Assembly: GCF_016433145.1 (NCBI RefSeq)
Contig: NC_058130.1
Coordinates: forward strand, 4,154,107-4,218,106
DNA length: 64,000 bases
Origin: Gracilinanus agilis
Taxonomy: Eukaryota
Direction of reading: 5' to 3'
Positions 268 to 54,227 of this stretch are shown here, in pieces. How positions within the stretch are numbered: the first letter of the stretch is position 1; each line of letters begins with the position of its first letter. Made by a program: the position numbers and the translations under genes. The notes below the pieces were generated by a model. The model had not been told where the DNA came from, made no database searches, and saw only the letters and a program-made list of their open reading frames with translations.

Positions 268-486
268 GAATTATATAAATATAATAACTTAGCCTCTCTC
301 TTCTTTCCATGAAAACCCCAAAGATCAAAGTTTCCCATTTCGCCTCTTCCTAACTGGAAAGAAAGGCACGCGTGCCCCTTCTCTCCTAGGGCCAATGAAT
401 ACGCTCCTCCAAACAGCTGAGAGCTCCTTTGACGCCTCTGACCGTGGGCAGATGCTTCCCTCCTACCCGGTAATGTGCCTCATCCC

Positions 487-495
487 CCTTGCCTT
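487..495 (-). promoter_or_regulatory. Non-canonical GC 5' splice site (AAG|GCAAGG)
   Basis: ELMO1 homology ends exactly at DFNK (AAG, base 493). The intron then starts GCAAGG. The first GT downstream is 26 nt away and out of frame. Confidence 0.85.
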
Positions 496-629
496 GTTGA
501 AGTCTTCCGAAGTTGCCCTCATCTCCTTCCAAGTCTTGTTCAGCAGCTGGATGCAGATGCAAAAGAATTCCTCAAAGGACCGGTCATGGGTGAAGAACAT
601 GGGGTGAAAGTCGTTGCAGGTCTCACTGG
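493..629 (-). CDS. ELMO1: ELMO1 internal coding exon, 137 nt (equivalent to human exon 16 by my recollection of numbering); part of the ELMO domain
   Basis: Minus strand translates (P)[45 protein letters not shown], the ELMO1 sequence. Acceptor is ttcctcccacag at 630-641 and a CTAAC branch point lies at 663-667. Its phase matches the upstream exon (C|CC = Pro). It is absent from the ORF track. Confidence 0.97.
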
Positions 630-799
630 CTGTGGGAGGAAGTAGAATGAGGAAAGAATCCAGTTAGAAGAGGGCAGGGATGGCAGAGACAAAGTCAGGA
701 GGTCTCAGAAATGGCCACGAGCTCGGGCACAAGTACCCCATGGCACTTCCCTGAACTAGAGCCAGGAGAACCAAACAGGCAGGCGATTTATCCCTCGAA

Positions 800-26934: not shown

Positions 26935-28733
26935 AAAAGATTACCTGCCCTTTTATCCAGCCACACCACTGCTGGGTTTACACCCCAAAGAGATTATAAG
27001 GAAAAAGACTTGTACAAAAATATTTATAGCTGTGCTCTTTGTGGTGGCAACAAACTGGAAAATGAGGGGATGTTCTTCAATTGGGGACTGGCTAAACACA
27101 TTGTGGTATCTGTTGGTGATGAAATACTACCGTGTTCAAAGGAATAATAAACTGGAGGAATTCCATGTGAACTGTAACAACCTCCAAGAATTGATGCAGA
27201 GTGAAATGAGCAGAACCAGGAGAACGTTGTACACAGAGACGGATACACCGTGGTAAAATAGAATGTAATGGACGTCTGTACTAGCAGCAATGCAATGACT
27301 GAGGACAATTCTGAGGGACTTATGAGAAAGAACACACTCCACATCCAGAGAAAGAACTGTGGGAGCAGAAATACAACTGCTTGACCACATGGGTGGAGGG
27401 GGATATGATTGGGGATGCAGACTCTAAACGATCACCGTAATGCAATTATTAATAATATGGAAATAGGTCTTGATCAATGACACATGTTAAAGCCAGTGGA
27501 ATTGCTCATTGGCTACAGGAGGGGGTGGGAGGAGGGGAGGGGAAGAGCATGAATCATGTAACCATGGAAAAATATTCCAAATTAACTAATTAAATACAAA
27601 TTTTCAAATAAAAAAACAAACAAGGTCAGGTAAGTCAAAACTAGGGTAGATCTGGCAGAGATGACATCAATCTCAACATCCCTCATTTCCTTCAGAAACT
27701 GATGGCAGTGGCAAAGAATTGTCATGACTGATCTGCTTGCCACCCAGATGGCTGCCAAAGGCAACACTGGGTTAGAATACAAACTAATCCATAAAAATGT
27801 CATGTGGGAGAATGAACAGTATCATCTCATAAAGCAGAGAATCTGTAGAGGGCAAAAGAATTGAAAGAAAGTTTGGCGAGCTAGCCAATCTCAGGGGCAT
27901 TCGAGGACAAAAACCAAAAGAGGACCCCAAACACAAAGGAAATGGAAATGTCTGCACAAATGAATATAAGAAAGTTTTCTTTACCCATCAAGACCATGGA
28001 ACCCTATACTCGACCCATGACATCATATTCCCTGAGAAACTTGGAGAGAACATAGAAATAGTACCAGACAGAGAAATGATGGGAAAAGCATTTGCAGCAA
28101 ATCAGTCTGTGCTGGGACCAGTACAATGCGGAGAGACTGATCTGTTGGGGGCTGACAGAGGGCAGTGAGGGGTACTAATAGGAATGGGACCCCCATTCTC
28201 TGAAATCTTGCATTTCTCACCAGTTAGCATTAGAAAGAATCTGCAGCATTAGTCAAGCACAAATTGAAGCATTAGTCATTAGTACTGGTTCCATAATATA
28301 CTATACTGGGCCATCAGCTTTGTGCCTAATCTGTCTTGTTTATTACTTATATTGTTCTATATTTACTTTAGTTCTGAACTGTTAGATATAATTAATTACC
28401 TATAGTGGTTGTCTCTTGGCCTGTATCTTCCCCTCCCCCTTCACATTCCAGAAGGGTAGCAAGACCTCTCACACAGACGAATGATGACAAGGTGGACAAT
28501 GGGGGAAACATGAGACACGGGCACTAAGGATTCTGGCAGTCCAGAAGGATCTCCCAAACCTATGTGTGCTCCTTTTCCCCTATGACCAAACCACACCTCC
28601 TCCTGAATGTGGCCATGCTCGTTTTGCAGGAAATACCTCTGACCTCACTGATTAACAAAAATTAACTGAGAAACCTTAAACTTCCAAACCAATGGATACG
28701 GCAGCCAATAACCAGCCCTTGGGTTGGATTTTT

Positions 28734-34019: not shown

Positions 34020-34510
34020 AGGAAGGAAGGAAGGAAAGAAGGAAGGAAGGAAGGAAGGAAGGAAGGAAGGAAGGAAGGAAGGAAGGAAGGAAGGAAGGAA
34101 GGAAGGAAGGAAGGNNNNNNNNNNNNNNNNNNNNNNNNNNNNNNNNNNNNNNNNNNNNNNNNNNNNNNNNNNNNNNNNNNNNNNNNNNNNNNNNNNNNNN
34201 NNNNNNNNNNNNNNNNNNNNNNNNNNNNNNNNNNNNNNNNNNNNNNNNNNNNNNNNNNNNNNNNNNNNNNNNNNNNNNNNNNNNNNNNNNNNNNNNNNNN
34301 NNNNNNNNNNNNNNNNNNNNNNNNNNNNNNNNNNNNNNNNNNNNNNNNNNNNNNNNNNNNNNNNNNNNNNNNNNNNNNNNNNNNNNNNNNNNNNNNNNNN
34401 NNNNNNNNNNNNNNNNNNNNNNNNNNNNNNNNNNNNNNNNNNNNNNNNNNNNNNNNNNNNNNNNNNNNNNNNNNNNNGGGAGGGAGGAGGGAAGGAAGGA
34501 AAGAAAGAAG
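34020..34510 (+). repeat. Long (GGAA)n microsatellite spanning an assembly gap (364 N, 34115-34478)
   Basis: GGAA units on the left of the N run and a GGAA/GGGA-rich tract on the right. Confidence 0.95.
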
Positions 34511-35389: not shown

Positions 35390-38300
35390 TTCACCAATCC
35401 CTGCTTCAGCCTGGGCTGAGCCAGGGGTAGAAGGCAGTCTCTTCCTTCCCCTTCCAATGGACTGAAAACATCACAGAACCAAGGGAAAAGAAGCCATTCT
35501 GGAAGTAGCAGCCCCATTTCACAGAAAACCTCTGAGGTGATGTACTTGATGTCAGAATCCTCCAGACACCCACACTGAGGGAAGGCCGTGTAGCCCAGTG
35601 GAGAGAATGCTGCCTTCTGAGTCAGGAGACCCTGGTTCGAATTCTACTTCTGGCCTTTTTTAACTGGCCACCTTCGTTTGAGTAAGTTCCATCATCTCTT
35701 TAGGTCTCAGCTTTCTCTTCTGCACAACGAGAGCATCATGCCAGGGTGGGGGTGGAGTGCAGGGAGAGATCACAGACTGGGGCCCCTAGATCCCAAGATG
35801 TTCCTGGGTTGGCTTTCGGGGGTCTGTGGGCTAGGATGGGAAAACCACCACAGCATCATTTTCACTAACTTCCGACAGAAATGGAGCATTTCCTTTCAGG
35901 ATGAACGTAGAGGCCCAAACCTTATTGGGGCCTTCACGTGGCGGCCAAAGGGCCCATGATGCACGAGAAGGTGAAGGAGCTCGGACTAGAGGAACTCCCC
36001 GAGGGCTCTGCAGGTCTAAATCTGTGACTGTGTCCCCCTAAGGGAGGGCTCAGGCGAAGGGGATGCTCTCCAGGCTCCCCACGTCAGCAGCATTCTTCGA
36101 GTAGAAGAGCAAACTGCATTTAAAAAAATCCTCTCATTACGGTTTTCTTCAGAAGTCTACGGCGAGCAGCAAGCCTTCGGAAGGCTCCAGCCTCCTCTGA
36201 GTCGCTCAGCCCCCAGGAGTCGAGGAAAGGAGGAGGAAGCAATTCCCCGCCATAGTGCCGGGAGCCAGCTAATGACCGTGCGGTCACTCTGAGCCATTGA
36301 TTTCTCCATGTGGATGTTGAAATATTTTCCTCTGCTTTTTAATACAACTGGCTCCCCCCACCAGAGAATGAGACAGCCCAATACCACGGTCTGTGTGGCC
36401 ACTGCCTTGAGCCTACCCACCTCCTGCAAGCACAGGCTCAGATACACGGATCAGCCCATCATATTTTGCACGAGGAAATCAACCTTCCTCTAGTTAAAAA
36501 CATGCTTCTGCTCAGCTTGGATTTGGGATGTGCCTGCCCTCCCCCCCCCCCCCACAGCGTGATTCATTAGAGAAATGTTCTATTAGTGTGCCACCCCTCC
36601 TTCCCTCCCCCCACCATGCCTTGGCTTTGTGGGCTCCACATGAGTCACGGGCTCTGACTCACCACTCACTCTTATGACAAAGGGAACCTGCCCTCCCTCC
36701 CTTCTCCTTCCTTACCAACCATCCACCAGCTTCACTGGCAGCATTTAGTCACACCCAGGAGAAGCGACGGAAAGGAAGGGGAGGGCTGGCGCCACGACTG
36801 GTGCTAATTATTTTTTTAGCAAGTACCACTGTACATAATGTACCTTTCCTCTAACAACACAGAAAACACAGAGGTGCTTTGCGCCTGATTTGGAGAATAT
36901 TCTTCTAATCTGAGTAATGGGCCCGGCTTGTTTTACTCATTAATACATACAGAAAACAGAGGGCCGGGCAAAGCGGCCCAGTGTGCTTCGGCCACGCTGG
37001 GAGTCATGACAAATTCCCTGGTCACTGGCTCATTCTTTTCTTCTTGCTAATCGGGAAGCATGGCATTGTGGGTAGGGTCCTGGGCTTGGCATGGGAAAGC
37101 ACTGGATTCAAATCCCACCCCTGCCATTTGAGCCAAGAGGTCTGGTTGACCCAAGCGATACATTCGATTTCTAAATGCTTCTGGAAACCCAGCAGGACTT
37201 AGCCACGACGTCCCAGGAGGGTTATGATCTGCACGGGTGGAGGTATTTCCTACACTGGGAATTCCCCATCGTCGTGGCTAACGAAATCAATGACTTTGTA
37301 GCTATCTACATATTAAGCCAACCCCAAAGCCTGATCATTAATAGAACATTCGGCCACCTACATCAGTAGCTATGGAGGATGACGCTGCGTTTTTCGGGTG
37401 TGTGACGGTCACCAAGCAGAGAGGTGGCCTCCACAGGCCCCATTCAGGTTTCTCCTCCTGGCCTTGCTGGAGGAGTTCAGGCGCATCCCCAGTTTCATCA
37501 TTCCTTTAAAATACTGAAATGCATGGAAGCAGGCTTCTCTGCAGAGTGCTGCTCTGCTGGCAGCGGTTCTCTAACCCGAGGAGGCGCTGGCATGCTCCCT
37601 CCTGGTGGACACCCCCTTCTTGGCAGCCTTTCCCAGGGGAGCCAACCTCAGCTTGGATGAAAAATGGATAAAAATACTTGCCACCCACTTGGCTCCAAGA
37701 GACGTAGAGATGATTGATAATGTGCACAGCCTGGGCGAGAGGGGAGGGCTCAGAAGAGAAGCAAGGGAGCAGCACTGGCATCGCCAGGCTTGGGAGAAGA
37801 GGAGACATCTGTCCAAGGGAATGTCTGCTGGGCAAAAAGGAGGCAGCATTCAGCAGAGGAGCCCGACCGTAAGGCTTCAGCGCTGAAGAGGTTGGGAATG
37901 GAGCCTCTGGAGAGGCCACCAGATAATGGAGCCAAAGGCACAAGATCAGAGAGAAGCTTTCAAATGAGGAATGAATGCTATTTGGAGGGCAGGAAGCCAG
38001 AGGCTGTTCGGTCATAGAAAACATGGAAGGGGCAAAATGGCAGAAGGAGAGAGCTGAGATTCCTTGTGGGGTCCACAGAGACGGGTAGGGCTGGTCACCG
38101 GGCAGGCGGCAGCCTTCTAAGGAGGGAAGTCATGAGGAGATAAGAAAGGCAATTTTAGCAGCAGGATTTTTAATTAAATGGAAGGCACAGAGTTTGAGAG
38201 AAAGATTGATGAAAAGAGCCCAATAAACCAGAAGGGACGACAGCAAAACCTACAAGGACGGATCAGGTGGGAGGAGGGGTGCTGAGGGGGAAACAGCCAC

Positions 38301-39971
38301 AAGGATGGGGACTAAGTGGGGAAGGGGGGAAGGACAGGAAGGTTCCAGGAAAACTAAGATCTGAAGGTTGGACAAAGGATGTGCTAATGCATCTGCCTCT
38401 AGAACAAGAGATCTGCCACATTTGTGCATTTGCACACACACAATCCACTCCCCCTCCCCCACCCCCTCCTGTAGGAATCCTGGTCTTCTTCTGAGACTCC
38501 CTTTAGGAGCTCTGTCCTCTGCGGTCTCCTCTGATCCCAGATGCCCCAGTTCTTCAGTTCAGTCCCTCCTCCAGTTATTTGTATTTCTCTGTGCACACAC
38601 TGCCATCACCCCCCAGTGAGAACGGAAGCTTAATGAGGGCCAAGGCTGTGTTTTGGGTCTGGTACCTCCCCAGTGACACGCCACACCGTGCCAGGTACGA
38701 AGTGAGTGTCTGGTCCATTTGGGGGAGGTGAGTTAGGAAGCGCTGGGGCCTCGGATCTCGCTCATCTCAACGTGGAAACGATGCTGAGAAGCCAACGTGG
38801 TCACGTTGTCCGGGAAGCTGGGAGGATGTCCAGAGGAGAAGAATGGCGGAGCTCCACAGGACTTTGGGGAATCATCGGCGTTCTCTAGTGGAAATTACGG
38901 TGAGGGAAACAGGCAGGTAGCCGTCCCCAGGTCACTACGACCAGCACATGTCGGCAGGCTGACAGAGTATAAAAATATATTGGGCCGTTAAGTCGTAAAA
39001 GGAGATTTGCTTTATTACCTTTCCCAAGGGGACGCTGCCTGGGAGCCGGATGCAAATGACGGGGGACAGCTCTTCGGTCGGATTGGTTTGGGCACATTTG
39101 GAAGTCACTAGTCACGATCCAAAAGACAGACCCGGCCCGGATTTACTGGCTCTCTGCCCTGGCTTCTTGGGTAGAAGATGGCCCCCAAAGTCCTCAACAG
39201 AAACAAGCTCGGGTGGCGAGAGATCAGGAGCCTGAACACTGGCCAGGGCCTTGGGGCCAGATAATGAGGAAGTGACCGGGACAGGTCGCCATAAGTGGTG
39301 TCCAAGGCGGCCTGGCGGAAGATGAGAGGCGGAGGCCATGCCCAACTTAGTGACCGTCCGTGCTTCCTCCTCAGTCCTGACTCCTCGGCACCAGCTCGGA
39401 CCGGAAAAGGCTGCTCCCAGGCTTGCTCGGGCGGGGCCAGTCTTCCGTCTTCCAGCGGTAACCTGGCTTTGGCCTGCTCAAGCTTAGCCCCCTCCTCCAC
39501 CCCCACCTCAACCAAAAGCCCAAACGGAATGGAACGGGACAAAGCTGGAAGGCCCAATGCCAATACCCGCGAGCCTCCGTCCTCGCCTCAGAAATCAGAG
39601 GCCCCCCTCTCTGCCATGGAGAGGAAGGAGCACACGGCAGGGGGAAGCACCAGACTACTGGAAGAGAGAGAAATCCAAGAGGCCGTCAGGACGAGGTGAC
39701 CCACGAGGCAGACCGGTACAATGGCCAGAGAGCCAGACCTGGAACTCAAACGTGGCCTCAGTTGCGAACTCCGTGGAAAGCAAATCGCTTAACCTGTTCC
39801 TTAATCTCCTCTTACAGAAAACAGGGACACTAACAGCCCCCTCACAGGGGTGTTGTCAGGATCAAAGGTGGTAACGAGAAGCAACTCTTGTTTTATCAAG
39901 AGCAAAGTGACCCACTTAGAAGCAGCTACGGGGGCCGATTAGATCTTAGATCGTTCGTGCCCAGTTTCGTT

Positions 39972-40384
39972 TGTGATATAGAAACCTGGGAGTCCTCGAC
40001 CTAATTCTGAGGTCCCTCATCGAAACTTCCTGCGGCCATTTAGCACTCTTTCAAAGCTTCATCGCCCATGATTCCTCTGGCGCGGTGAGGTGGACGGGAA
40101 GTTTGATAACGTAGACGGAGCTATAGAGACTCGGGGCGGGACTGGAACGCTCTCCTTCTCCTGCTGAAGCAGTGTGGGGGGAAGGTACGGCGCGGCATTT
40201 GGGAGGGGACGTAGGCTTGAGACCACCACACCAGTGCAACTATCAACAATTTGGAAATGGGTCTTGGTCATCTGAACTAAATCCTAATAGGCACGTGGCT
40301 TCGTTCTCCTAAATGGCTTTCAATAAACCCTTTGAACCACGATCATTTTAATTCTGTCCCTCTATATTAATTTTATTTATTACA
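39972..40384 (+). mobile_element. Probable solo LTR (about 410 bp)
   Basis: TGTGAT...TTACA ends; gttt flanks both sides if the first T is shared; TATA-like gctataga at about 40100; AATAAA at 40322. Confidence 0.55.
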
Positions 40385-40711
40385 GTTTTGGCAAACCTTA
40401 GGGATTCTCCAATTCTTTCAAAGACTCACAGAATCTCGGAATGGATGGAATTGGACAAATAGACTAGTCTATCCACCCAGAGCGGAATTTCCCTTTCACA
40501 ACCCTTAGTGAATGATTCTCCAGCTGTGTTCTGCCATAGGGCCTTGTTGCCGTGGCTGTGTTCTCTCCCAAGAAGGTCACCAACTCCGGTCTTGGGGCCT
40601 TGGTGATCGTCAAAAGCTCTCATTCCAGCTGGTCTACAGCCACCTAACCATGCCCTTCCCAGCTTCCTGATGACACACTGGCATCCTCTTCCCTCCTGTT
40701 TTCCATTTCTT

Positions 40712-40898
40712 TTTCTTTTTTTAAACCCTTGTACTTCTGTGTATTGGCTCCTAGGTGTTAGATTGGTAAGGGTGGGCAACGGGGGTCAAGTGACTTGCCC
40801 AGGGTCACACAGCTGGGAAGTGTCTGAGGCTGAATTTGAACCCAGGACCTCCCGTCTCTAGGCCTGGCTCTCCATCCACTGAGCTACCCAGCTGCCCC
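40712..40898 (-). mobile_element. Full-length SINE1_Mdo-type SINE
   Basis: Perfect 15-bp TSD tgttttccatttctt (40697-40711 / 40899-40913). Confidence 0.93.
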
Positions 40899-41175
40899 TG
40901 TTTTCCATTTCTTGTACAAGGAAGAGTCATGAAAATGCTGCTATCCTTGTTTCCACAAAAGATGGAACAAGGGACTGACCCGATCTGCATGATCTCTCCT
41001 TGGAGCCGGCACTATCATTCCTTTGTATCTGCACCCCTCGAACACAACACCGTGTCCAGAACGTGGCAACTTCTTAAGAAATGGGTTTTTCGTTTATTCA
41101 TTCATTTGGCTTTTACTGATAAACTGGCTTTGACCTGGGCCAGCCTAACCAACCTGAGCAAGCTTGGACCCCTCC

Positions 41176-41321
41176 TGTAATATAAGAATAATACGGCCAT
41201 GTTTGCTTGGGGCAACCCGTCAGTTGCCCTGGCTGGAATGTTGACACTCGTAAAACCTCCACTTTTTCAGCCTCAGCCAGTTCCAACCAAGCAAACATGG
41301 CAGCATTATTCCTATATTACA
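41176..41321. mobile_element. Unclassified MITE: 146 bp, 35-bp TIRs, TGT..ACA termini, 4-bp TSD CTCC
   Basis: Left TIR tgtaatataagaataatacggccatgtttgcttgg versus reverse complement of the right TIR tgtaatataggaataatgctgccatgtttgcttgg: 32/35 identical, no gaps. ctcc at 41172-41175 and 41322-41325. Confidence 0.8.
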
Positions 41322-44300
41322 CTCCCCACCTTCCCACCGCAGCAAGAAGCCGATGGTAATGAAGTGGAACAAACTGGAAGGACCAATCCCCGTGTCCATT
41401 TGCCCACCTAAGCTCCAGGGGGCTGGAACCCCTCGCAGGCTCTTCCTGTTCTCCTCCTGAAATTAGGGGGCGTTCTTGAGACTTTTCCTCCCTAATCGAG
41501 ATAGAAGCCGCCTCTCTTTAGCAGCACTGCGCACTGTTCTGAGTCCTTCTTTGGGGGACAAGCAGAGCATGTCTAATCCTTCGTCCATGTGACAGTGCTG
41601 GGGATACTTGAAGGTCGCTGTCACGGGCCCCCAAATCTTCGCTTTTAGAATTTCAACACTTGCACTTACTGTGATGGCACACGCTTGCGGTCCTCCTGTG
41701 GGACAGCGCGGTGGAGCCAAAGCCTTCCTGAAACGTGGCACCACGAGACAGATGCAGTCTGAGCAGGAGCCCCAGAAACTCGCCTGCGGCTAGGAGCAGC
41801 CCAGGACCGCTCTGCTGTCTGCCTGCCACGTGACGTCATTCCCTCGGCACGACCTTGGAGGCTCCTCCTGGCCAGCTGCTCCCTACCGGCACCTTTTCCA
41901 GCCTGTACGCGCCTCGCTCTCGCTGATTTTGTCTCCCAGCGTTATCGGAGAATTAGGAGGCCCAAATTAAATTTATTTCAATTTAGTGTTTAAAGGAACA
42001 TGTGTCAGGATAATTGGGTTAGGATTGCATAAAACACATTCAAATGAAGAGCAGGGAGTTGCCAGTCCCAGAAGGCTGCGCATCCTCGATGATGGACTCT
42101 TAAGCTCGTTTGCTGGAGATCCTGAAGTGCGCTCGCTCTCGTCACCCTCAGTCATTTCCCAAATCATAAACCAGTCATTTCTCTGCCGGAGGACAAGATG
42201 ACATTTCCCTGTCCTCAAAAAAAGCATCTGTTAAGGGCCTTGATGAATAAAATGTAGGATCTCCAGCCAAAGCCCTCTTTTCTATGCTCCATGTTTCTCT
42301 TGCCTTCCTCCGTTTCCATCCCTAGAATGGACCCTCTTTTCTGCCATGGCTTGCTGACGTAGAGGACCTTGGTAGGTTCATAGAGGCGTAGCTTTAGAGA
42401 TGGAAGGGAATGTGGGGATCACTGAGGCCTTCTTTTTAGGCAGGACAAACTGGAGCCCAAAGAGAGGCAGTGACTCGTCCAAGCTCACACACTGAGTCGG
42501 TGGCAGCTGTGATGCTCTGACTCCTGCGTTGCTTCTTTACCTTTACTATGCCTACTTTTCTTCCGAGGCCCCATGCAAGGACGCCTCCTCTAGAAAGTTT
42601 CCTTTGTCTCTCTCTGCCCGTCCCTATCTCTGAGCACTTCCAGGCAGCAAATGGGATCAGGCACCTCCATCTTTCCCAGCACGCTTTTCTTGGACCGTTC
42701 ATTAGCGGCCGTCTCTGCCTCCCTGGTAGTTCTGTGCTTCACACGCAAGTCTCGCTTCCCTCCCATGATCTCTTCGTTTCTCTCTCCTCCAGGCCCACAG
42801 CAGAGAATCCTCGCCCTGTATTTTTAGAAGAGCAAACCTCATTGCTAGCGTGATCCAGCCATCTGGCGGCCCGGTTTATTAATGTTTCTTAAGACCAAGA
42901 AAGGATTCTTGGAGAAAGAAAACCCGAAGGGGAGGGTCATCGTTATTTGAAGTTGATGCCAAAGAGAACAAGGGTGGCACTTTGCGCCTCCCAGATCATG
43001 GCACTGTAGGACGGCTACTCATTAGCTTTATGGAACGAGCCATTCCAAGAATTCTAATTTTGGCAGAGGAACATAAAGGCCCCGGGCACGCCATTGCCAA
43101 GACCCGAAGGGCTTCTTTTTTCGCTCCTGCTTGGGCATTTCCATCTGAGATGCACCCGATGAACCAAGACGACACAGTGAACTGCTCACATCAAGATAAC
43201 GAATTTGCTAAGACTTACTATGTGCCACACACGCTGAGAAGCGCCCAGCTCTGCTACGACACAGAAATACTCGGTAGCAGGCTTTCCCCGCCAGGCAACA
43301 CGTCAAAGTAGGAAGTTTGCCTTTTGGACGGTTCCTCAGACATCAGCACCGTGGCCAGCGGTAGCCTGGCTCTAAGGAAGGAACTCGGCCAGTTCTACTC
43401 AAGGCTGGGCTGTAGTGTTCTGTGCCCAGCCATTGTGTATCCTGCGGAAATGGAGAAGGAAGAGCTTTACAGACGACTGCCATGGTGCCCTGGGGCAGCT
43501 TCAGGGGCTCGCAGAATGCCTAAAGTCCATGGGAGCCTCCCGGATTTAGGAAGACCGAGGCAGAATGATCTGGAATCCTGGGAACACTTGGGACATGGGA
43601 AGGAAGCCAGGGAAGATGAGCATTCTAGCTGCTCCCTCTCCTCATAGGGGACTCCCTGGCTAGGCATCAGCCCTCCCTGAGGAGGCAACAGCTTTCTTAT
43701 GTAGGTGAGTAGAGGGTCGTCATGATACGGCCATCTTGGGAGAGCACACAGCGTGTCTAGTGGCAGGTCAGTCTCCCCAGATATCGCATCACCCCTGCTC
43801 ATCTTTCCTCTGATTGCAAAAAGGCTCAATTGTCCTTCACAACCTCCCGAGCTCTGACCCCTTTTCTCTTCCTGGGATTGCAGGATTTAGAACTATCTAC
43901 GCCATTGTAAAGAGGAGGACCCTGATGGCCAGAGAGATAAGTGTCTTCCCTTGTGGTCATCCCCAACAGGGCCGTACTCTATCCCAGCTAACCGATAAAA
44001 GCCGGGCTCTCGTGGCCGAGGGCATACGAACAGGAGCCTTCCGGAGACAACGACTCCGCTAAGCGTGTGACTCGGCTTCTGTTCGTTTCAGAACTTTGGG
44101 CCGATACTCGAAGACTCGCAGGTCTGCCCATGTCTAAGCCGGGCCCTGCGCTGGAATCTCCATGGAGCTTGGCTGCGAAACTCCCAGAGAACCTCCCAAA
44201 GGTCCTCCTTTTTTGGACGGTTACTGTCTGGATCGCTTGAGGCCCCACAAATCTGTTTATGGCTCCAAAGAGTCAAAAAGAGTCTTTCTAGGCAAAGACA

Positions 44301-45292
44301 CGAGCCGGTGCCATTCTTCTCTCACCGGCGAGTACGACCCCGAGGATGTGGCCCAGCTTGGATGGTTCTGTAGCCCACAAAAAGGGAGCGAAGGAGGGCA
44401 GAACCACGGACGGTTCCCGAAGGGCACCCCCCCGCCCTGGGGTCTTCCTGCCAGCTGCCTGCCAAGAGAAACGCAGCAGCCTGGGACCAAAGATGAACTC
44501 GGGCGTGCTCCAAGCGAAAGCACTGAGAAAATGGCTTCTGAAGCTGGAAGCCCCAGAAGTGCGCAGCAGCCCGGCGCACGCCTTGAGTTCTTAGCAGCAT
44601 CCCCGCCTCAGCCCGTGGCACACCCAGCGCCCAGCAGGAAAAGGATGGCCTCGACGCTTCGAGATGCGCCTCTGTGCCCTGCCTGGGAGAAGAGCCTGCT
44701 GAGTCAGCAAGTCACGCGAGGCAGGACTCGGCGCTGCTTCTCCTTCATTCGGCGGCCAGGGGGAGGCCCTGGGCCAGACGCACGGCGAGCCGGGGATACC
44801 GAGGCAAAAACAAGACGGCGCCTTCCGTGGAAGCACTCTCGGGTTACGTAAGACGGCTGACAGCAGCTAAGAGGGACGCCCTGCTTTGGGAGGCTGGAGC
44901 CAGCGTCACACACGCCAGCTCGCACGAGCTCAGGCGCACGTTTCCCATTTTTCCACATTGGGGAACAGCGTGTGCTCAGGTGAACCAGCGCACGTAAATC
45001 GGGGTGTCCCGGGAGGGGGCCAGGCCAGGCTTCCCAGAGGAGACGGGCCTGAGCTGTGCAGCAAAGCAAGGCAAAGAGGAGCAAAGGACTGCGTGGAGAG
45101 CGTGGAGGTAGGAGGGGATGCCGCGACCAGGGACGGGTACGCAAGCTTGGCTGACAGGAGAGCAACGAGGCGGCCAGCAGGGGCTGGAGCCAGACGATGG
45201 CGGCCTGGAAGTGCTGCGAGGCAATGGAGAGGCACCAAAGGCTTCTCAGACGGAACACAGTTGGATTTGGAGCTTAGAAAGACTATTAGGTA

Positions 45293-45470
45293 GGGCAGGT
45301 AGATGGCTCAGGGGATAGAGAGCCAGGCCTGGAGATAGCAGGTCCTGGGTTCCAATCTGGCCTCGGACACCTCCTAGCTGTATGACCCTGGACAAGTCAC
45401 TTAACTCGAAATGCCTCGAAACCAGCACTTAGTATGGATTCTAAGACGGAAGGGAAGGGCCAAACCAACA
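45293..45470 (+). mobile_element. Marsupial core SINE (MAR1b/SINE1-like); similar copies at about 47365-47530 and 48475-48610
   Basis: gggcaggtagatggctcaggggatagagagccaggcctggagat...ctagctgtatgaccctggacaagtcacttaac...gattctaagacggaagg. Confidence 0.8.
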
Positions 45471-47149
45471 AACAGGGGCTCCTCGATAACTCGGGATGGA
45501 TCCCATTTGGAAGATCCTGGAGAGCCCTTGTCGGAGTCAAGGTGAGAGACGGGAAGGTCTGAACTAGGGAAGAAGCTATCGAGGATGGAGAAGGGGGTCT
45601 CTGTGGGAAGCGAAGCGGGGACGGAGCTGCCTCAATTTCGAGACCCGCCGGATGTGCCGGCTAGGGGAGAAGGAAGGGTCAGGACGATCCCAACACGAGT
45701 GGCCCGCGGGTGGAGCACTGCATGGCCTCTAGGGAAAAAGTGGGAGGCGTGGAGATGGCCAGGCTGTCGCGCAGAGGGAGAGAATTCCACTTTGGGGTAC
45801 GCTGAGTCGGAGATGAGAGAGCTGCAGGCAAGTGTCCCGTCCATGCAGGCCCAAAGCCCAGGACAAAGACCGGCCTGAATGCGCAGATTGGGGAGGTTTC
45901 GGCGCACGGGTGACGCCCGCTGAAGGAGCTCCCTGGGGAGCTGATGACGGGGAAGCAGGAAGAGGCAAGAGGGGCCAGAAGACCCAAGACATCCTCCAGA
46001 AAACATCTAGTCACCTGCTCTAGAGCACGGCCGACAGACTCCATCTCAATAAACCCTCGTGACGAGCACCGGACGAAGCCATCGGGAACGTCCGGACCGG
46101 GCAGGGAGCCCTCTGGGACAGCAGAGCGAGCATCGGCCGAGCTGTTTAACCCATCGTTAACCTTCCTCCAATTCCCCACATCTTCGACTGTAGCTGGGAG
46201 TGCACGGCTGGGGCGACTCTCTTCCCTCATGTTGGTCGCTCCTCTCTCACCCGCAGCCTGGTGAGGCTGTCTGGCCTCCTTTATTTGGCTGTGGGACACC
46301 CAGTCACACCTGCGATTTCCTCAGGGAAACGGGCTTCTTTTATCCATGGAAGGCAGCTCCGTCTCTGCAAATGACAGCCTTGGAGAGCTACTGGAGCCCT
46401 GAGAGGGGGCTAAATGACTTGTCCAAGGGCATGTGGCCAATGTGTGTCACAGATGGGTCTTCCTGATTCTGAGCCACCCTGCCATACTGTGCCTCGCACG
46501 GTCAGTACTTAATAAATTGTTATTGGAGTTGACTGAAGATGCACCAGAACTATCCAAGTTAGCCCGTCAAGATTTGAAAAGCCCCTTTGAAAATGCCCTT
46601 ATTTGAGCCTTCAACCAACCTTATGAGGAAGCAACCAGTGGTCTTATTGTCCCCATTTTAAAGACGAGGAGACCGAGGCCTAGGGGAGCGTGTGACTTCC
46701 ATCAGCTCACAGAGCTGGGCTCAAAATCCATGTCACCTTCCCCCTAAGCCAAGTGGCTTCTCCCATGATGGATGACGGATGAGGGGAAAGCGAGCTGCTC
46801 ACGGCCACACCTCGGTCAGGCGGCGAATCAAAGAAGCAGCCAAAAGTAGGGAAGCAAACCAAGCGGAACATTCGAGACAGAGGAAGGTGGGAAAAGCCTC
46901 CCTGGCGCCTTCAGGGCTCTGACCCTGCTTGTACCTTGAACATCCTCGCAGAGAAAGAACCACCAGAAAGACTCAAGTCCTCCCCTCCCCCGCAGCCCCA
47001 GAAGAGGCATTTGCTGGGCCACGTGGAGGAGGGGGCCTTATTCACAGACAATGAACCTTCCATAGGTGTGGCGGTGCTCCACTCTTCCTACTCATCTGCT
47101 GTCTGTCCCTGAGGCAGGGGCAGGAGCTCTAGAACCGGGGGAAAGAACC

Positions 47150-47352
47150 TCCAAGTCGCCAGAATTTCAGAGCAAGAAGGGGCCTCAGAGGCATTAGGTC
47201 CAACTGATCCCTGAGCTAGAAGCTCCTCCATGATGCCCCAACGAGCAGGCGCGCAGCTCGGCTTAAAGACTTCCAGGGTGGGAGAGCTCACGGCCTCCAA
47301 GGCAGCCCTTTCCACTGTGATGTAGCTCGAGTTGCTAGCAAGTTTTTCTTAA
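47150..47352 (-). mobile_element. L3/CR1 LINE 3' fragment
   Basis: gcttaaagacttccagggtgggagagctcacggcctccaaggcagccctttccac...caagtttttcttaac matches the antisense CR1 tail; it explains track ORF MERAALEAVSSPTLEVFK. Confidence 0.75.
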
Positions 47353-50300
47353 CAGGAGATGAAAAGCCAGGCCTAGAGACAGGAGGTTCTGAGTTCAAAT
47401 CTGGCCTAAGACACGTCCTAGCTGTGTGACCCTGGGCAAGTCTCTTAACTCCCACGGCCTAGCCCTTCCTGCTCATCTGCCTTGGATCCTATACACGCAC
47501 TGATTCTAAGATGGAAGGGAAGGGCTTACCCAAATAATACCAGTAATACCAATAAATCAAGGCGAAATCAGCCTCTCTCAAAAGCAGCAGAGTAAGAGAG
47601 GCTGCTCCCAGCTCATCCGAATCAGAGCCATCCCCCAGGAGGCGGCCGGTGCATACCCAGAGTGGCCTCCCAGCATCAGAATCAAGGAAATGCCTTTTCC
47701 ATATTCACCCCAATTCATCCTGTGAAGTCCTCGCCTTAGACTTGAGCGCCTGAGTGGCTCCTTGACTTTGCTCCCAGGGGCCCGGCTGGCACAGGGTGCG
47801 AGGGCGGCCTTGCTGCCTGCCCCCCCCCCCAGGCCCAGCTCTTCCCCCGAGGGTCCGGCTGACCTGCTGGAAGCCCTCCTCCCGGTGTTACAGCGTTTTA
47901 CAGGCCCCTGCGCGGTCCGCAGGCCCTCCATGAACGGGAGGAGAGAAGTCCGTCCGCAGCCTGGCTCCCATCCCTTTCAGGCGGACGGCCCTCTTCGGTG
48001 GGGCCAGTCCCCAGGGGGGTCCCACTGCCCTCGGGCCACTCTCACCGGTGCTCGTCAGGTCTTGCTCCTCCTCTAAGCTCGCTTGCTGGCCCCTCCTTTT
48101 ACGTGGCTGTCGGGGAGGCCGAGAGGAGGCGGCCGGCCTGCTGGCCGCCCCTTCTGGTCCTGGGCCGGCCCTTTGATGACTTCACGGTGATGGCTGCGGG
48201 TCGGCCAGCCGAGGAACAAGTCGACACGGCTCGGCCTTAGGTAGGCCAACCCCCACGACCACACTCTCATTCCCGGCGGCTCCCTCCAAGGTCGGGAAGG
48301 ATCTGATGTGGGTGGCACAATCGCAGCCAAGACAGGCCGCGGCGGCCTGGGCCCCCGAAGTGGCCTGAACTCACGGCTGACCTTTGCTGATGAAGGGGAG
48401 ACCCCTTCCCCACCCCCTGCGGCTGGTATAGAAGGGCTTCTTGGGGTCATTTGGCTTTCCTCATCCTCTACAATAGGGCGGCTGGGATAGAGAGCCAGGT
48501 CTGAGGACAGGCGGTCCTGGGTTCAAATTGGGCCTCAGACACATCCTAGCTGTGTGACCCTGGGCAAGTCACTTAACCCCAGAGGCTGGGCCCTTACAGC
48601 TCTTGTGGCCCCTAGGCCTGGAATGCTTTGACCTTAATTCTATCCCCATCCCCTGCCCCCCTCTTGATCTGAGTCTCCTCTTTGGTTCCTCCAAAGCTCG
48701 GCTGAAAACTGCCTCTTCTCGGAAGCCTTCCCAGGCCCCGACTTCCTGTCCTCGTCCTGCAGCCATTGGGGCTCCGTCGTAGCCACGGCATCTTCCTTCC
48801 GTCGGTCCACGTTCCAAGCTCTTCCATGGTCCTTTGGAAAGGGCTTTGTTCTCACTTCCCCAGACTCGCCGTCATAACCCAAACCCAACAAGGGCTCAGC
48901 GAGCGCCTGCTTCTACTGGACGCCCGGCTCGCCCGAGTCCTGGACGCGCATGCGGCTCCCTCGCAAAAGGAGTTTCCTAATAAACGATGGAGGCTGCCGG
49001 ACTCGCCTTTGGCTGACTTGTCTCCGACGTCTCGTGGCCGCGGACTTGGCTTTGACACTGCCCCGGTCAGAGGCCTCGTCTCCCCTGCGGCCCCTCCCTA
49101 CAGCTGGAGCCGGACGCCGAATGGCTCTGCTCCCCCCTTTTACCCCTGGGAGAAAGAAAGCCCGTCACTGCCTCTCCCGCCCTGGGGAGCTCTTCTGCGA
49201 CGAGACACGGCGGGAACGTGGCGCTCTGTTTTTAGCCCTGCTGGACGCGGTTTTCCAAACCGCCGGCGTTGGGGGAATCGGCTCTTGGCTCTTATTGTCC
49301 AAATAACCAATTAACCTTCCTTTGGCTTTGCTGGCTTCCTTTGGGGACGGACGAGCCACACAAATCTTTCTGTTTCAGGAAATAAGGATTCCCAGCCAGC
49401 AGGACAGAGAAAGAACGAGGCGCAAAGCCATCCCCGGCCCTCGGAGCACCCCCACCTGCTCTCTCCTCTTCCCTCGGGATCCTTGCAGGGAGTCGGGGCT
49501 CTCGGAGGGAAGCTCCGGTGAAGAGGATGCCGACGGGCAGCACCTAACTGGGTCACGGCATGAAATCTTGGAAAGAAAATGGGCTGCTTCAGAAAGAAGC
49601 CTGGCCATCGCGGAGTTCCTCCGGCTGCTCTCTGACCATCTGAGGCAAACCTTTCCTTCTCGGAGCCACTGCCCGGTTAGCTGCTCTCACCTTTAAATTC
49701 CGGTCGCCTAGCAAGGCCACCAGGCCCGAACCTATCTGGGTAGGAAGCTGGCAGCAAGCTGCAGAGGCTGGGGACGTTTGGCTGGCTGTGACACTCAGGA
49801 CCAGTCGTGGGGCGGGCACGGAGCCTCAGCCACAGCCGGCTCCGGGCCGAGAGCTTCCTAGCCAAACCTGCCCTCGAGAGGGGCCCTGGCAGGCCCGGCC
49901 CATGGAGCAAAAAAGCTCTTTAGGAAGCAGAAAGCGGGGCTCTTGGGGAGAGGCGGACCTTCAGTCGGAGGACCTGAGCAGCTGGGGCGCTGGCTCACTG
50001 GCCATCTTCCAGGCCAACACAGCGGCCTTCTCTAGGCCTCAGGCTCTTCCTCTAGATCATGAAGAAACAGAACCGGGGGAACTTCCTGAGCTTGGGCCAG
50101 TCCCTCCAGTGTCGGGGGAGCCGCTTCTCCAATCACTGCCATCCTGGGGACGTTCTCTATTTGCGGGTGACTTCCCGATGGCATCAGAAGAGGAACCGTC
50201 TCCTAACAGCATCCGACAACTCGTCGTCCAGAATGGCAGCATCTTGGACTTAGAGTCTCCCTCAGGGTCCCTGGGAGAAGCTTTGCCCCCCTGGCCAGGG

Positions 50301-53300
50301 AGCTCTTTGTCAAAGTCAGCAGAGAAAATGTAGCCTCTACAGACCCAAATGGTGGACATCACGAAGGCCAATCAATGGGTCCATAACGAGTGACCAGCAT
50401 TCGAAAGCATCCTGTTTCCTGCTGGCTGAGTGTCGACAGCCTCTTTACCTTCCCCTGCCCCAGCAACCAGCAACCAGAACTGGGGAGGGGAGTGCCAGCC
50501 CCCTACGCCTCAGACGTTGAGAGATCAAAGTAATATCAGCATTGGGGAAGCTCATTCCCCTCTCTGGGCCTCAGTTTCCTTCTCTATAAAAGTAGAAGGC
50601 TGGACTTGAGGGCTGCTCATGTCACCTCCATCGCTAAGTCCACGAGCTTCACAAAGACATCATGGAGCACTGGAGGGGTCAGCCAGCTGCGCTGGAACAG
50701 CATCTGCCACTCCCATTTTCTAGGGCCACGTCGAGGGTGGAGGCCCGCATCTGGCTCGGCTCAGCTCTCTTGGGCACATGGATGTCTTCCTTCCCTGTTC
50801 TCCCGCCGGGGACCCCAGGGACATCAGAGCCTTCCATGTGCTAGCTTAGCACCCTCCTGCGTAGAGAGGAAGAAAGACTCGAACACAGAATGGCTTGGCC
50901 AAGGGGAGGAGGGCGGGCAGAGCCCCACTGGCTGGCAGCCTCCTCCCTTCCTATGGGAAGCCTGTAGGTTTGCTGTGGTGACCCAGAGCAGGAGGAACGG
51001 GGGCACTGTGAAGGCTGGGCACTGGTTCCGTCAGTCCCTGCCCACTCGCTCGATGCCTGGGCGGCCGCAGAACCAGGGAAAACGCGGCCTGGCGCTAGTT
51101 GGGGATGTTGACCGTCCGCAGGTCACCCAATCACAGCCGGAGTCTCCACAGCCTTGCTAAGGTTCTGAAAAGCCAGCCGGATCGCATCCTCTCTTCAGAG
51201 GGAAGCTCAGGGAGTCCCGATGCGCTGCGGCCCCTCCAGTCCAGGGCCTTCTCGATAATGGGAAATGCAAACTGCACTGGGCACCCGGCAGGACTGAATG
51301 TGTGGCCTCTCCTGGCTTTGCTTCTTGGTCCTGAAACTGCCTGAGGGCAGGGGCTAAGCCACGGGGCCTGGAGCACGTCTGGGGCCTTGCGGGGCTTCCA
51401 CTCCACGGTGGAGCAAGTACAGAATCACCGAGGAAATGTCCAGGAGGTGTGTGTGTGTGGGGGGCGGCTAACGCAGTGCGGCAGGGTCTGGGGTTCCCTC
51501 TCCCCAGCCAGGCAATGCAGCATCACTGGGGATGGGGCTGGGGGGAAGGCCGGGCCGGCCGCTCATCACACCTCCCAGCGCCCTTCTTTCTCCTTTTCCA
51601 GAGGGATGTGGAGGAACAGAAAGTGAGGCCTGCTGGCACTCAGGAAATGGCGGGACTTCGGACGGCTGCCAGGGCGCCCGCGGGACACTCCCTCCATCAC
51701 CGGGTCACCTTTGGGTGCCCGGCTTGGTCAGGCTGCAGCTGACCATCGAGGGGCAGTTTGGCTTTACACCAAGGGAGTCAGAGCCCTTTCCATGCCCCCC
51801 GATCTATGGAGAGCAGGTCCGGGCACTGCGGAATGCGGCCGCCCTATAAGTAGGTCAGCTGAGGATAAACGGGGGGATTTGGAGAATCCTCGGGGGCCGC
51901 GACGGCATTCCAGCTGTTTCTGTGTGAGCAGGATTTTAATTTTCATTCTTTCTAAGGATGGAGATTATGTGGACGTGTGCAGGGCCGAGGGGGAGGGTCC
52001 GCCGAGGCTGGCTCTAGCCTGATCGCCACCCCTGAGCCTCGAGACCCCTTTCTGGTCTCCGGCGGCAGAAGCGCCCAAGAAGAGGGAGCGGCCCCTCCCG
52101 CTCTGCCATCCCCACGCAGGTTACCGAAAGCGCATGAGTCACTTCCATTTGGGGGCAGAGTGGGCAGGGAAGGGAAGGCAGGGGATTTGGCCGCCAACAG
52201 ACTCCCCATGCCAGCTGGTCTGGCACCCACTGCTTAACACCCAGAGATATTTAGAGAGAGGTAGCCTTCCTGCAAAGGAGGAGTAAAAGCACGGCGACTT
52301 CTCCAGACTTCCTGCCAAATGCGGCCGCTGACTGACGAATGTCCAAGAAAAGCCGGCGGGGATGCTCTCGGGGTCCGTCTGCGTTCCCCCGGGGGGGGGG
52401 GGCAGGGGCACCTTCTGCTGGGCAGCAGCTTCCTTCCAAGAACAAAGGGAAGCATCATGGGCTCCCCGAGGGCCCGCCAGCCTCATGGTTGAGTCTTGCC
52501 CTCCCTCGCTCTGGCCTTTTTCAGTGGGGTCCAGAGGAAAGGATCTGGAGGCAAGCTTTAATGGGCCGCTATCAGGACACGATGGTTTGTTGTCTCCCCA
52601 TTAGCCTGGCAGCTCCTTGAGGGCAGGGCCCGGCCTCGGCCCTCTCTGTGTCCCCGATGCGTGGCGCAGAGAAGGTGCTTCAAAAATGTTGATTGATGTT
52701 CTTTGGATTGTCGCATCCCTTTGTAGCCAAACGCGGTGATCACCACGAGGGCGAGCGATGAGTCTCAGGGAGGTGACCAGGGAGCTGACGGGCTGAGTGA
52801 CGTGGCCAGACAGCAGGGGCGGGAGGCGGAGGTGGACGAGGGCCTCCTGGCTTGGCGGCCAGCTCTGGAGGGCCACGTCGCCATCGAGGCTGTCCTTATC
52901 CTTCCTCCGTTCCTAAATCGGAGCCCTCGCTGCGTCGAAGCCACTCTGGGAGATGGCGAGATGGCCGGCGCCTGCCCGACCCTCGTGGAGCTTATGATCC
53001 AGCAGGGAAATGGGGCGAGTGAACAGGGGCAAACGCCACCAGGGACCCAGGACGTCTGGCCACTCAACCTGCTTTACGACGAGTCAAGGAATCGGTCATC
53101 CCGGCCTCAAGCGCCTCCTGCAGGAGGGGGACCCACAGAGCTCCAGAGACAAGAGGGGAAGTGGCTGCCCCCGGGGAGTTTCTGTTCCACAGAGGGAGAA
53201 GAACAGATGCATTCTGGGCTGTTGAGAGGAAGGGCAGGGATGCAGCGACTGGACTTGGGTGGGACCCAAAGAAGCCCAGGAAGGAGCTGCCTGCGAACAG

Positions 53301-54038
53301 TTTCCAGTTTTCCCTTCACAACCAAAATAAGCAGACATCGTCCAGCGGAGCCAATCCAGAACCCACAAGGGCGGAAGACATGAAGAATTGTAAAGAAAAA
53401 GGAGGCCCCTTGGGTGGGCCCAAAGCCTGGCTCTGGGCGCTCTCACCACCAGGGATGCTTAACATTCCACGGGCAGCCCGGAGCTGACACAGTGGCAGGC
53501 TGTAATTACCCCTAAAGGCCATTTGATTTGATAACATATTCCTACCCAGGATCATTTACATAATGCTTTACAATTATGCATTAATATGCAAATCTGAATC
53601 AAGAGATAAGGAGACAAATTCTGGGCAAGGGCATCCACCTGCATGCATATGCAGTGAAGTCCTTCAGCCTGAAGGGCAGCCAGGAGGGTACGGATCAGCC
53701 ATAACTAGGGGGCGGCAGTCAAGGCTTTGGCCCAGGGTGCTAGAATTTAAAGGGCAAAGACTCCAGGCTTAGAAACAACTCCATTTGGGGTCTAGTTAGA
53801 GGAGAAGGCTTTCTCTGGGAGCTCGGGCTCCTCTCAGTCTTCCTGGTCTTTCTCTCTCCTCCTCCCTTCCCATCTCCCCCTCCGGGGTGGGGCCAGGGCC
53901 TCTCTCTGAAGTCCCCCTAATCCTCAGTGAATCTTCTTTGTCCCTGACACAGAAGAGCAGGGATGGCTCTGGTACCTGATACACAATAAGGGACCAGGCT
54001 CTCATCTTTGTTATCCCTGGTCTGAGCTTCATCTAAGG

Positions 54039-54227
54039 CAGCGATTCCCAAAGTGGGCGCCAACGCCCCCTGGTGGGTGCTGCAGCGATCCAGGGGGCGG
54101 CGATGGCCGCAGGGGCATTGATTGTTCCTATTCATTGCTATTAAAATAAAAAAATGAATTTCCAGGGGGCTGAGGAATGTTTTTTCTGGAAAGGGGGCAG
54201 CAGGCCAAAACAGTTTGGGAGCCACCG
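54039..54227 (-). mobile_element. Non-autonomous hAT MITE, same family as 10126-10320, opposite orientation
   Basis: cagcgattcccaaagt ... agtttgggagccaccg; 8-bp TSD atctaagg/ctccaagg (6/8); colinear with the reverse complement of the first copy. Confidence 0.85.

What the first reader, a model, noticed from the sequence alone, without database searches (positions are those of the whole stretch)
41172..41325. Unclassified MITE with TGT..ACA ends, 35-bp TIRs and a 4-bp TSD (Ginger-like signature) forming a host-sense hairpin
Seen: 146-bp element, TIRs 32/35 identical, flanked by CTCC on both sides, with an inner 7-bp hairpin GGGCAAC-ccgtca-GTTGCCC. In the ELMO1-sense RNA two of the three TIR mismatches become G-U pairs, giving a 35-bp stem with one true mismatch. 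Established: mammalian MITEs are mostly hAT (8-bp TSD), Tc1/mariner (TA) or piggyBac (TTAA). TGT..ACA termini with 4-bp TSDs are the signature of DDE integrases of the LTR type and of Ginger/TDD DNA transposons. I know of these in mammals only as domesticated genes (GIN1, GIN2). MITEs such as MADE1 and MER53 have produced miRNAs. Inference: possibly an undescribed marsupial non-autonomous family of a superfamily not thought to have been mobile in mammals, and a candidate dsRNA or small-RNA source.
Basis: partly seen in the sequence, partly recalled or inferred. Interest (0 to 1): 0.75.

Follow-up and report, generated by a model that had tools for sequence, protein, structure and literature searches.

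The report
Foldback MITE copy in ELMO1 intron
This 146-base inverted-repeat element is one moderately old, internally damaged copy of a small non-coding jumping-DNA family that is highly repeated in this marsupial. Its ends look like those made by integrase-type enzymes, but which enzyme moved it could not be settled here.

Summary
Arms 41176-41210 and 41287-41321 are 32/35 complementary, run TGTAA...TTACA, and are flanked by CTCC on both sides. Two of the three mismatches become G-U pairs in the minus-strand RNA. That strand is ELMO1-sense, because an ELMO1 exon lies on the minus strand at 466-663.

It is not a single-copy local foldback. Of 192 contigs from a public run of the same organism laid at 80% likeness, about 190 are other copies. 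Their similarity stops exactly at 41176 and 41321, with unrelated flanks beyond. In other copies the inverted repeat runs at least 65 bp per arm and carries the small GGGCAAC hairpin on both arms. This copy has apparently lost about 22 bp of its right arm, and about 32 bp of its middle is nearly private to it.

So it is a fixed, decayed copy of an abundant foldback MITE family. The same scan has noted at least nine look-alike elements elsewhere in this genome.

The Ginger assignment is a resemblance only. TGTNR ends, long TIRs and a 4-bp TSD fit. The target CTCC fits neither Ginger1 (CCGG/CCGT) nor Ginger2 (AT-rich). No autonomous partner could be sought, and Dfam/Repbase were not available. 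Small-RNA or dsRNA function is untested.

The parts
41172..41175 (.). Left copy of the 4-bp target-site duplication, CTCC
   Evidence: It lies directly outside the family boundary at 41176 defined.
41176..41210 (.). Left terminal inverted repeat (35 nt), starting TGTAA
   Evidence: In one search, eight other-copy contigs lose similarity exactly before 41176 and their flanks do not agree (0.49).
41210..41229 (.). Small hairpin GGGCAAC-CCGTCA-GTTGCCC. It is part of the family's longer TIR and sits in the most repeated part of the element
   Evidence: One search gives the sequence. In one search the 41212-41235 bin has the highest summed contig depth, and in other copies the mirror image of 41211-41240 (28/30 identical) also stands on the right arm.
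41230..41245 (.). Inner continuation of the family's left arm. 41230-41238 (TGGCTGGAA) pairs with 41278-41286
   Evidence: In one search most other copies match up to 41245 and then continue with a different, mutually agreeing interior (agreement 0.9). Searches give the fold.
41246..41277 (.). Central stretch nearly private to this copy: a diverged interior or filler left by a rearrangement
   Evidence: In one search depth falls to about 60 (baseline 26-29) in the 41260-41283 bin, with only one further contig there.
41278..41286 (.). Remnant of the inner right arm. Comparison with the family suggests that about 22 bp, the right-arm copy of the hairpin, is missing between 41286 and 41287, bounded by a CCA microhomology
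   Evidence: Inferred from the loose-end consensus before 41287 (nine contigs, agreement 0.91) compared by eye with the sequence.
41287..41321 (.). Right terminal inverted repeat (35 nt), ending TTACA
   Evidence: In one search, eight other-copy contigs lose similarity exactly behind 41321 and their flanks do not agree (0.48).
41322..41325 (.). Right copy of the 4-bp target-site duplication, CTCC
466..663 (-). Open frame holding an ELMO1 exon (human residues 433-480). It fixes the host gene's strand
   Evidence: E 1.9e-28 to human ELMO1 chains, weaker (7.8e-22) to ELMO2.

Best explanation
The element at 41176-41321 is one fixed, moderately old, internally rearranged copy of an abundant foldback MITE family of this marsupial.

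What the family looks like: it is non-coding, its termini are TGTAA...TTACA, and its inverted arms are about 65-70 bp, each holding a small GGGCAAC/GTTGCCC hairpin.

How this copy arose: it was inserted as DNA into a pyrimidine-rich site (...GGACCCCTCC|CCACC...) of what is inferred to be an ELMO1 intron. The enzyme, supplied in trans, made cuts staggered by 4 bp, and repair duplicated CTCC. Afterwards the copy lost about 22 bp of its right arm and picked up three arm substitutions. It is now inert.

Shown here: the element is multi-copy, the boundaries are exact, there is a 4-bp direct repeat, and the host gene's strand is known.

Inferred: DNA-level transposition by a DDE enzyme of the integrase-like kind. 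I put about 0.35 on a Ginger-type transposase specifically. The intronic position and the right-arm deletion are also inferred.

Transcribed within ELMO1 pre-mRNA, the element would fold into a stem of about 35-44 bp. I take that to be a by-product of its shape, not a function.
For: -: 192 contigs of a run of the same organism lie on 40900-41600 at 80% likeness or better. Only 2 are 99% or more alike (the locus itself); 28 are 95-99%, 115 are 90-95% and 47 are under 90%.
- flank depth is 26-29, and summed depth inside the element reaches about 72,900.
- similarity ends exactly at 41176 and 41321, with disagreeing flanks (8 contigs on each side).
- three variants of the terminal sequence all start TGTAA.
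- other copies carry the mirror image of 41211-41240 on their right arm.
- the TIR is 32/35, absent from shuffles, and the chance of the 4-mer TSD is about 0.5%.
- a structural scan of the whole window finds only this one element with TGT...ACA ends, an arm of 18 nt or more and a 4-6-bp TSD, so the pattern is not a common accident.
- stops or very short frames leave no coding capacity.
- contigs from samples S2 and S3 bridge the left junction, and no contig skips the element, so the insertion is shared by the sampled animals.
- other notes of this scan report look-alike elements in the same genome, including a follow-up that found a family of thousands of copies. These are unverified leads.
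Against: - The TSD rests on this one copy. TSDs of other copies could not be tabulated.
- Summed contig depth is not a copy number.
- No empty orthologous site was examined.
- No autonomous element or transposase was seen, so the enzyme class is inferred from end and TSD signature alone.
- The site CTCC matches neither Ginger1 (CCGG/CCGT) nor Ginger2 (RTATAY) preferences (PMC2836005).
- Published Ginger1 families are low-copy, unlike this one.
- Whether this copy belongs to the same family as the scan's other TGT...ACA elements was not tested.
Confidence: 0.85

Rival explanations
1. This is the superfamily sub-claim and the reader's reading. The family is a non-autonomous derivative of a Ginger1 or Ginger2/TDD DNA transposon, moved by a Gypsy-integrase-like transposase that was active in this marsupial lineage.
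For: - The termini TGTAA fit the TGTNR rule.
- Family TIRs of about 65-70 bp lie within the Ginger ranges of 40-270 and 50-180 bp.
- The TSD is 4 bp.
- These are compared against PMC2836005.
- No other superfamily that I know combines TGT ends, long TIRs and 4-bp TSDs; this last point is from my own knowledge.
Against: - The target CTCC, in a C-rich site, fits neither the CCGG/CCGT nor the AT-rich RTATAY preference.
- Ginger1 families are described as small.
- As of 2018, Ginger1 had not been found as repeats in human. As of 2012, no Ginger2 transposon had been found in any vertebrate.
- No transposase was seen here.
Confidence: 0.35
2. The family belongs to another DDE superfamily, or to one not yet defined, that makes 4-bp TSDs. 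Sola-, Chapaev- or Academ-like elements are named from memory. On this reading the TGT...ACA ends are convergent.
For: The target site fits neither published Ginger preference. The high copy number and foldback shape are generic MITE traits.
Against: TGT...ACA ends are conserved across three variants of the terminal sequence, which is the integrase-type signature. I know of no such ends in those other superfamilies (own knowledge, not tested).
Confidence: 0.3
3. The element is a mini-element built from inverted LTR ends and inserted by a class I endogenous-retrovirus integrase, which also gives TGT...ACA ends and 4-bp TSDs.
For: The end and TSD signature is the same. By other notes of the scan, this genome is rich in ERVs and non-autonomous proviruses (unverified).
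Against: - There is no LTR-like direct repeat, primer-binding site or polypurine tract in 146 bp.
- Retroviral integrase does not excise chromosomal DNA, and a palindrome without replication signals has no route to a linear cDNA (established retrovirology). Thousands of copies are therefore hard to explain.
- No resemblance of the TIR to an ERV LTR end was found in the window.
Confidence: 0.07
4. The element is a single-copy local fold-back duplication, or a chance inverted repeat, and not a mobile element.
For: No second copy exists in the 64-kb window.
Against: About 190 contigs from elsewhere in the same organism match it, with exact shared boundaries. No such repeat appears in shuffles.
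Confidence: 0.01
5. The hairpin has been taken over by the host as a source of miRNA or siRNA, or as an edited dsRNA regulator of ELMO1.
For: The host-sense RNA forms a 35-position stem with one mismatch and a strongly negative fold energy (z -7.8). MITE-derived miRNAs exist in mammals, and TE-derived miRNAs exist in opossum (PMC4091103).
Against: - No Rfam family matches at E up to 1.
- The 76-nt branched loop is unlike a pri-miRNA.
- The arms are decaying (3/35) and the right arm is damaged, as expected without constraint.
- The opossum TE-derived miRNAs reported come from L1/L2 and a Mariner, not from such elements.
- No RNA data were available.
Confidence: 0.05

Closest known systems
Ginger1 DNA transposons (Bao, Kapitonov and Jurka 2010, PMC2836005)
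   Same: TGTNR termini (here TGTAA), long TIRs (40-270 bp; the family here is about 65-70 bp), and 4-bp TSDs.
   Different: - Ginger1 TSDs are CCGG (75%) or CCGT/ACGG (24%); here the TSD is CTCC.
- Ginger1 families are low-copy and known from invertebrates. In mammals they are known only as the domesticated GIN1 gene.
- No transposase was seen here.
Ginger2/TDD DNA transposons (PMC2836005; PMC3575427)
   Same: TGTNR termini, 50-180-bp TIRs, and 4-bp TSDs in metazoan families.
   Different: - The preferred target is AT-rich RTATAY; here the site is C-rich.
- No Ginger2 transposon had been reported in vertebrates as of 2012, apart from the SCAND3/KRBA2 domains.
- No transposase was seen here.
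Class I ERV solo LTRs
   Same: TGT...ACA ends and a 4-bp TSD.
   Different: An LTR has only a few bases of inverted repeat at its ends, is hundreds of bases long and carries promoter and polyA signals. This element is a 146-bp foldback whose family arms are about 65-70 bp.
Mammalian palindromic MITEs such as MADE1 (Tc1/mariner) and MER53
   Same: Short, non-coding, nearly all inverted repeat, abundant, often intronic, and hairpin-forming in host transcripts.
   Different: Those have TA or other superfamily-typical TSDs and different termini (own knowledge). Here the ends are TGT...ACA and the TSD is 4 bp.
Look-alike foldback elements noted by this scan in the same genome (for example s1-153820, s1-153898, s1-192279)
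   Same: TGT...ACA ends, a 4-bp TSD, long inverted arms and sizes of 115-400 bp. One follow-up found thousands of copies.
   Different: Sequence relatedness to this copy was not tested. Several of those are perfect (young) palindromes, whereas this copy is diverged and damaged.

Membership tests
MITE (generic non-autonomous TIR element) | Short (under about 800 bp) with no coding capacity | tested here: met
   The element is 146 bp, and six-frame translation shows no room for a transposase.
MITE (generic non-autonomous TIR element) | Terminal inverted repeats | tested here: met
   32/35 in this copy. At least about 65 bp in other copies.
MITE (generic non-autonomous TIR element) | Many dispersed copies that share exact boundaries | tested here: met
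   About 190 other-copy contigs. Similarity ends at 41176 and 41321 with unrelated flanks.
MITE (generic non-autonomous TIR element) | Target-site duplication of constant length across copies | tested here: inconclusive
   CTCC/CTCC in this copy, chance about 0.5%. Other copies' paired flanks could not be read. Other scan notes report 4 bp (unverified).
Ginger1 | TGTNR termini | tested here: met
   TGTAA on both arms and in three variants of the terminal sequence.
Ginger1 | 4-bp TSD with CCGG or CCGT/ACGG specificity | tested here: not met
   The length of 4 is met, but the sequence is CTCC, and a second readable flank also ends in CTCC. Only one or two copies were readable.
Ginger1 | Autonomous partner encoding a Gypsy-integrase-like transposase (H2C2, DDE, GPY/F, YPYY) | not testable with these tools
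Ginger2/TDD | TGTNR termini and 50-180-bp TIRs | tested here: met
   TGTAA termini; family arms of at least about 65 bp.
Ginger2/TDD | AT-rich RTATAY target | tested here: not met
   The reconstructed site is GGACCCCTCC|CCACC. This is a single copy.
Ginger2/TDD | Autonomous partner with an H2C2 + DDE transposase lacking GPY/F | not testable with these tools
   As for Ginger1.
ERV class I LTR | Part of, or derived from, a direct long terminal repeat with U3-R-U5 organisation | tested here: not met
   The element is a foldback with inverted arms and has no LTR-like partner in the window.
miRNA precursor | Match to a described RNA family, or small-RNA reads from the stem | tested here: not met
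   No Rfam match at E up to 1 on 38000-44000. Reads could not be tested because no RNA run was found.

The most novel reading that the evidence does not exclude
The family, together with the look-alike TGT...ACA / 4-bp-TSD foldbacks that the scan keeps finding in this genome, was mobilised by an integrase-like (Ginger-type) DDE transposase that was active in a marsupial lineage, possibly after horizontal transfer. That would be the first evidence that this kind of transposon has been mobile in a mammal, and at a copy number far above that of known Ginger families.
Probability: 0.3. Interest if true: 0.7.

Novelty: new member of a known kind. Interest (0 to 1): 0.4.

Why it matters
This copy is an ordinary decayed MITE insertion in an intron, and nothing suggests that it matters to ELMO1.

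The family is the interesting part. In the open literature read here, recently active mammalian DNA transposons belong to hAT, Tc1/mariner, piggyBac and Helitron. An abundant family with integrase-type ends and 4-bp TSDs would add a superfamily to that list if its transposase proves to be Ginger-like. It would also bear on how integrase-type enzymes manage excision.

That question needs the whole genome and a repeat library, not this window. The scan had already met the same signature many times on other DNA of this genome.

Tried and rejected
1. Other copies inside the window. None was found with the full TIR, the inner TIR, the family core or the family interior, allowing 2-3 mismatches. A structural scan for TGT...ACA arms with 4-6-bp TSDs found only this element.

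2. Copies in public metagenome and viral contig collections, using two patterns. There were 0 hits. These collections probably hold no DNA of this animal, so the blank says little.

3. Rfam on 38-44 kb. The only hit is a chance-level lncRNA match elsewhere.

4. RNA evidence. No RNA run holds the stretch, so expression, editing and small RNAs are untested.

5. Literature. No open paper links Ginger elements, or TGT...ACA foldbacks, with marsupials. The key opossum repeat paper (Gentles et al. 2007, PMC1899126) is not held.

6. Earlier findings by sequence gave a blank.

7. Not done: using the large protein searches on translated arms to fish for other copies.

8. GingerRoot was rejected because its TSD is 6 bp. 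hAT was rejected because the 8-mers do not match (one search shows that only the 4-mer matches).

9. A second ELMO1 exon upstream of the element was not searched for systematically, so the intronic position is inferred from gene order, not shown.
Full report
**Observation**

- The repeat finder reports arms 41176-41210 and 41287-41321: 35 nt, 91% complementary, 76 nt apart.
- The three mismatches are at 41185, 41193 and 41195.
- A 35-nt pattern search with up to 3 mismatches finds only these two arms in the 64-kb window, and nothing in 100 shuffles.
- CTCC stands directly outside both arms, while the 3-, 5- and 6-mers there do not match.
- Two 4-mers at this spacing agree at only 0.4-0.55% of positions in this window.
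- The inner hairpin GGGCAAC / CCGTCA / GTTGCCC is at 41210-41229.

**Strand and host gene**

Both strands fold far better than shuffled controls: + strand -66.3 kcal/mol, z -8.4; - strand -77.3 kcal/mol, z -7.8. Only the minus-strand RNA turns two of the mismatches into G-U pairs, leaving one unpaired position in a 35-position stem.

The open frame at 466-663 on the minus strand matches human ELMO1 residues 433-480 at E 1.9e-28, and ELMO2 less well.

The element lies about 40.5 kb upstream of that exon in transcript sense. Residues 1-432 must be encoded further upstream, so I infer that the element is intronic. No upstream exon was located.

**Copy number and boundaries**

A public run of the same organism (coded X1, kept as Logan contigs) holds 92% of the sampled words of 39800-42700. 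Its contigs were laid on 40900-41600 at 80% likeness or better.
- 192 contigs were placed. Only 2 are 99% or more alike (the locus itself); 28 are 95-99%, 115 are 90-95% and 47 are below 90%.
- Flank depth is 26-29. Inside the element the summed depth rises to about 10,700 (41188-41211), about 72,900 (41212-41235) and about 19,000 (41236-41259).
- The tool warns that summed depth is not a copy number. I therefore say only that the family is highly repeated, very roughly of the order of a thousand copies.
- Eight contigs lose similarity exactly before 41176 and eight exactly behind 41321. Their loose flanks do not agree with one another (agreement 0.49 and 0.48).
- Contigs from two further samples bridge the left junction, and no contig skips the element. 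The insertion is therefore shared by the sampled animals.

**Family anatomy**

- Three variants of the terminal sequence are visible, and all start TGTAA.
- Most other copies match 41176 (or 41196) to 41245 and then continue with a different interior that agrees among them (agreement 0.9).
- Nine copies read, just inside the right arm, the mirror image of 41211-41240 (28 of 30 identical by my own comparison). In typical members the inverted repeat is therefore at least about 65 bp per arm, and the small hairpin is present on both arms.
- In this copy the right arm lacks that part. Compared with the family, about 22 bp seem to be missing between 41286 and 41287, bounded by a CCA microhomology. 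Pairing resumes between 41230-41238 and 41278-41286, as the folds also show.
- Most of the central stretch, about 41246-41277, is nearly private to this copy. Only the 41260-41283 bin was resolved there, with one further contig.

The copy is thus a decayed, rearranged member. Its arms differ by 8.6% and most relatives are 90-95% alike. That suggests an age of tens of millions of years, but I did not calibrate this.

**What it is**

It is a short, non-coding element with inverted ends, a direct repeat of the target, many dispersed copies and exact shared boundaries. That makes it a MITE.

A structural scan of the whole window for TGT...ACA arms of 18 nt or more with a 4-6-bp TSD returns this element alone. 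The pattern is therefore not a frequent accident.

**Which enzyme moved it**

The signature fits the published description of Ginger1 and Ginger2/TDD: TGTNR ends, TIRs of about 65-70 bp and a 4-bp TSD. Published TIR ranges are 40-270 bp and 50-180 bp, and metazoan Ginger2 families give 4-bp TSDs (PMC2836005).

Several things do not fit or could not be tested.
- Ginger1 TSDs are CCGG or CCGT/ACGG, and Ginger2 prefers AT-rich RTATAY. The site here is C-rich, with CTCC duplicated.
- One other readable left flank also ends in CTCC. This might hint at a target preference of the family's own, but two cases prove nothing.
- Ginger1 families are described as small.
- As of 2018, Ginger1 had not been found as repeats in human (PMC5753468). 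As of 2012, no Ginger2 transposon had been seen in any vertebrate (PMC3575427).
- GingerRoot makes 6-bp TSDs.
- No autonomous partner could be sought, because only this window and the contig table are available.

I therefore do not file the element as a Ginger member. I give about 0.35 to a Ginger-type transposase, about 0.3 to another or an undefined DDE superfamily, and about 0.07 to insertion by an ERV class I integrase. The ERV reading shares the end and TSD signature, but it offers no route for a palindrome without replication signals to reach high copy number.

**Function**

Nothing points to one.
- Rfam has no match on 38-44 kb.
- No RNA run holds the stretch.
- The arms are decaying and one is damaged.
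- The 76-nt branched loop is unlike a miRNA precursor.
- TE-derived opossum miRNAs reported so far come from L1/L2 and a Mariner (PMC4091103).

The long stem in ELMO1 pre-mRNA could be a substrate for editing, as any intronic foldback could. That remains untested.

**Relation to the rest of the scan**

Other notes on this genome, which other agents call an opossum, list at least nine elements with TGT...ACA ends, 4-bp TSDs and long inverted arms. One follow-up (s1-153820) concluded that its element belongs to a young foldback MITE family with thousands of copies that is absent from two related species. These are unverified leads. I confirmed high repetition for this element, but I did not test whether it belongs to the same family. 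The scan has therefore found this kind of thing before on other DNA.

**Verdict**

'MITE with integrase-type ends' is supported. 'Ginger' and 'undescribed' remain open, and the small-RNA idea is unsupported. The copy is ordinary. The family-level question is worth a genome-wide analysis.

Noticed in passing
window 466-663 (-): An ELMO1 exon, matching human residues 433-480 and nearly identical at the protein level (E 1.9e-28). ELMO1 is therefore on the minus strand of this window.
   Followed up: yes
window 24577-28165 (+): A run of open frames with L1 ORF2-like peptides in an AT-rich block (GC 0.37-0.41), probably a LINE-1 fragment. Judged by eye only.
   Followed up: no
window 41548-41595: A short stretch 230-270 bp to the right of the element where summed contig depth rises about fivefold (137-141 against 26). 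It is probably a fragment of another repeat.
   Followed up: no
window 44001-64000: 20 kb at 56-65% G+C, which is unusually GC-rich for a marsupial intron. No cause was looked for.
   Followed up: no
window 41158-41175 compared with a contig of runs X2/X4: Another copy of the family, with a different variant of the terminal sequence, is also preceded by ...CTTGG(N4-5)TCC and ends in CTCC just before TGT, like this copy. This could be a target preference or a coincidence (n=2).
   Followed up: partly
window 14633-14795 and 34115-34477: Two runs of N (163 and 363 bases).
   Followed up: no
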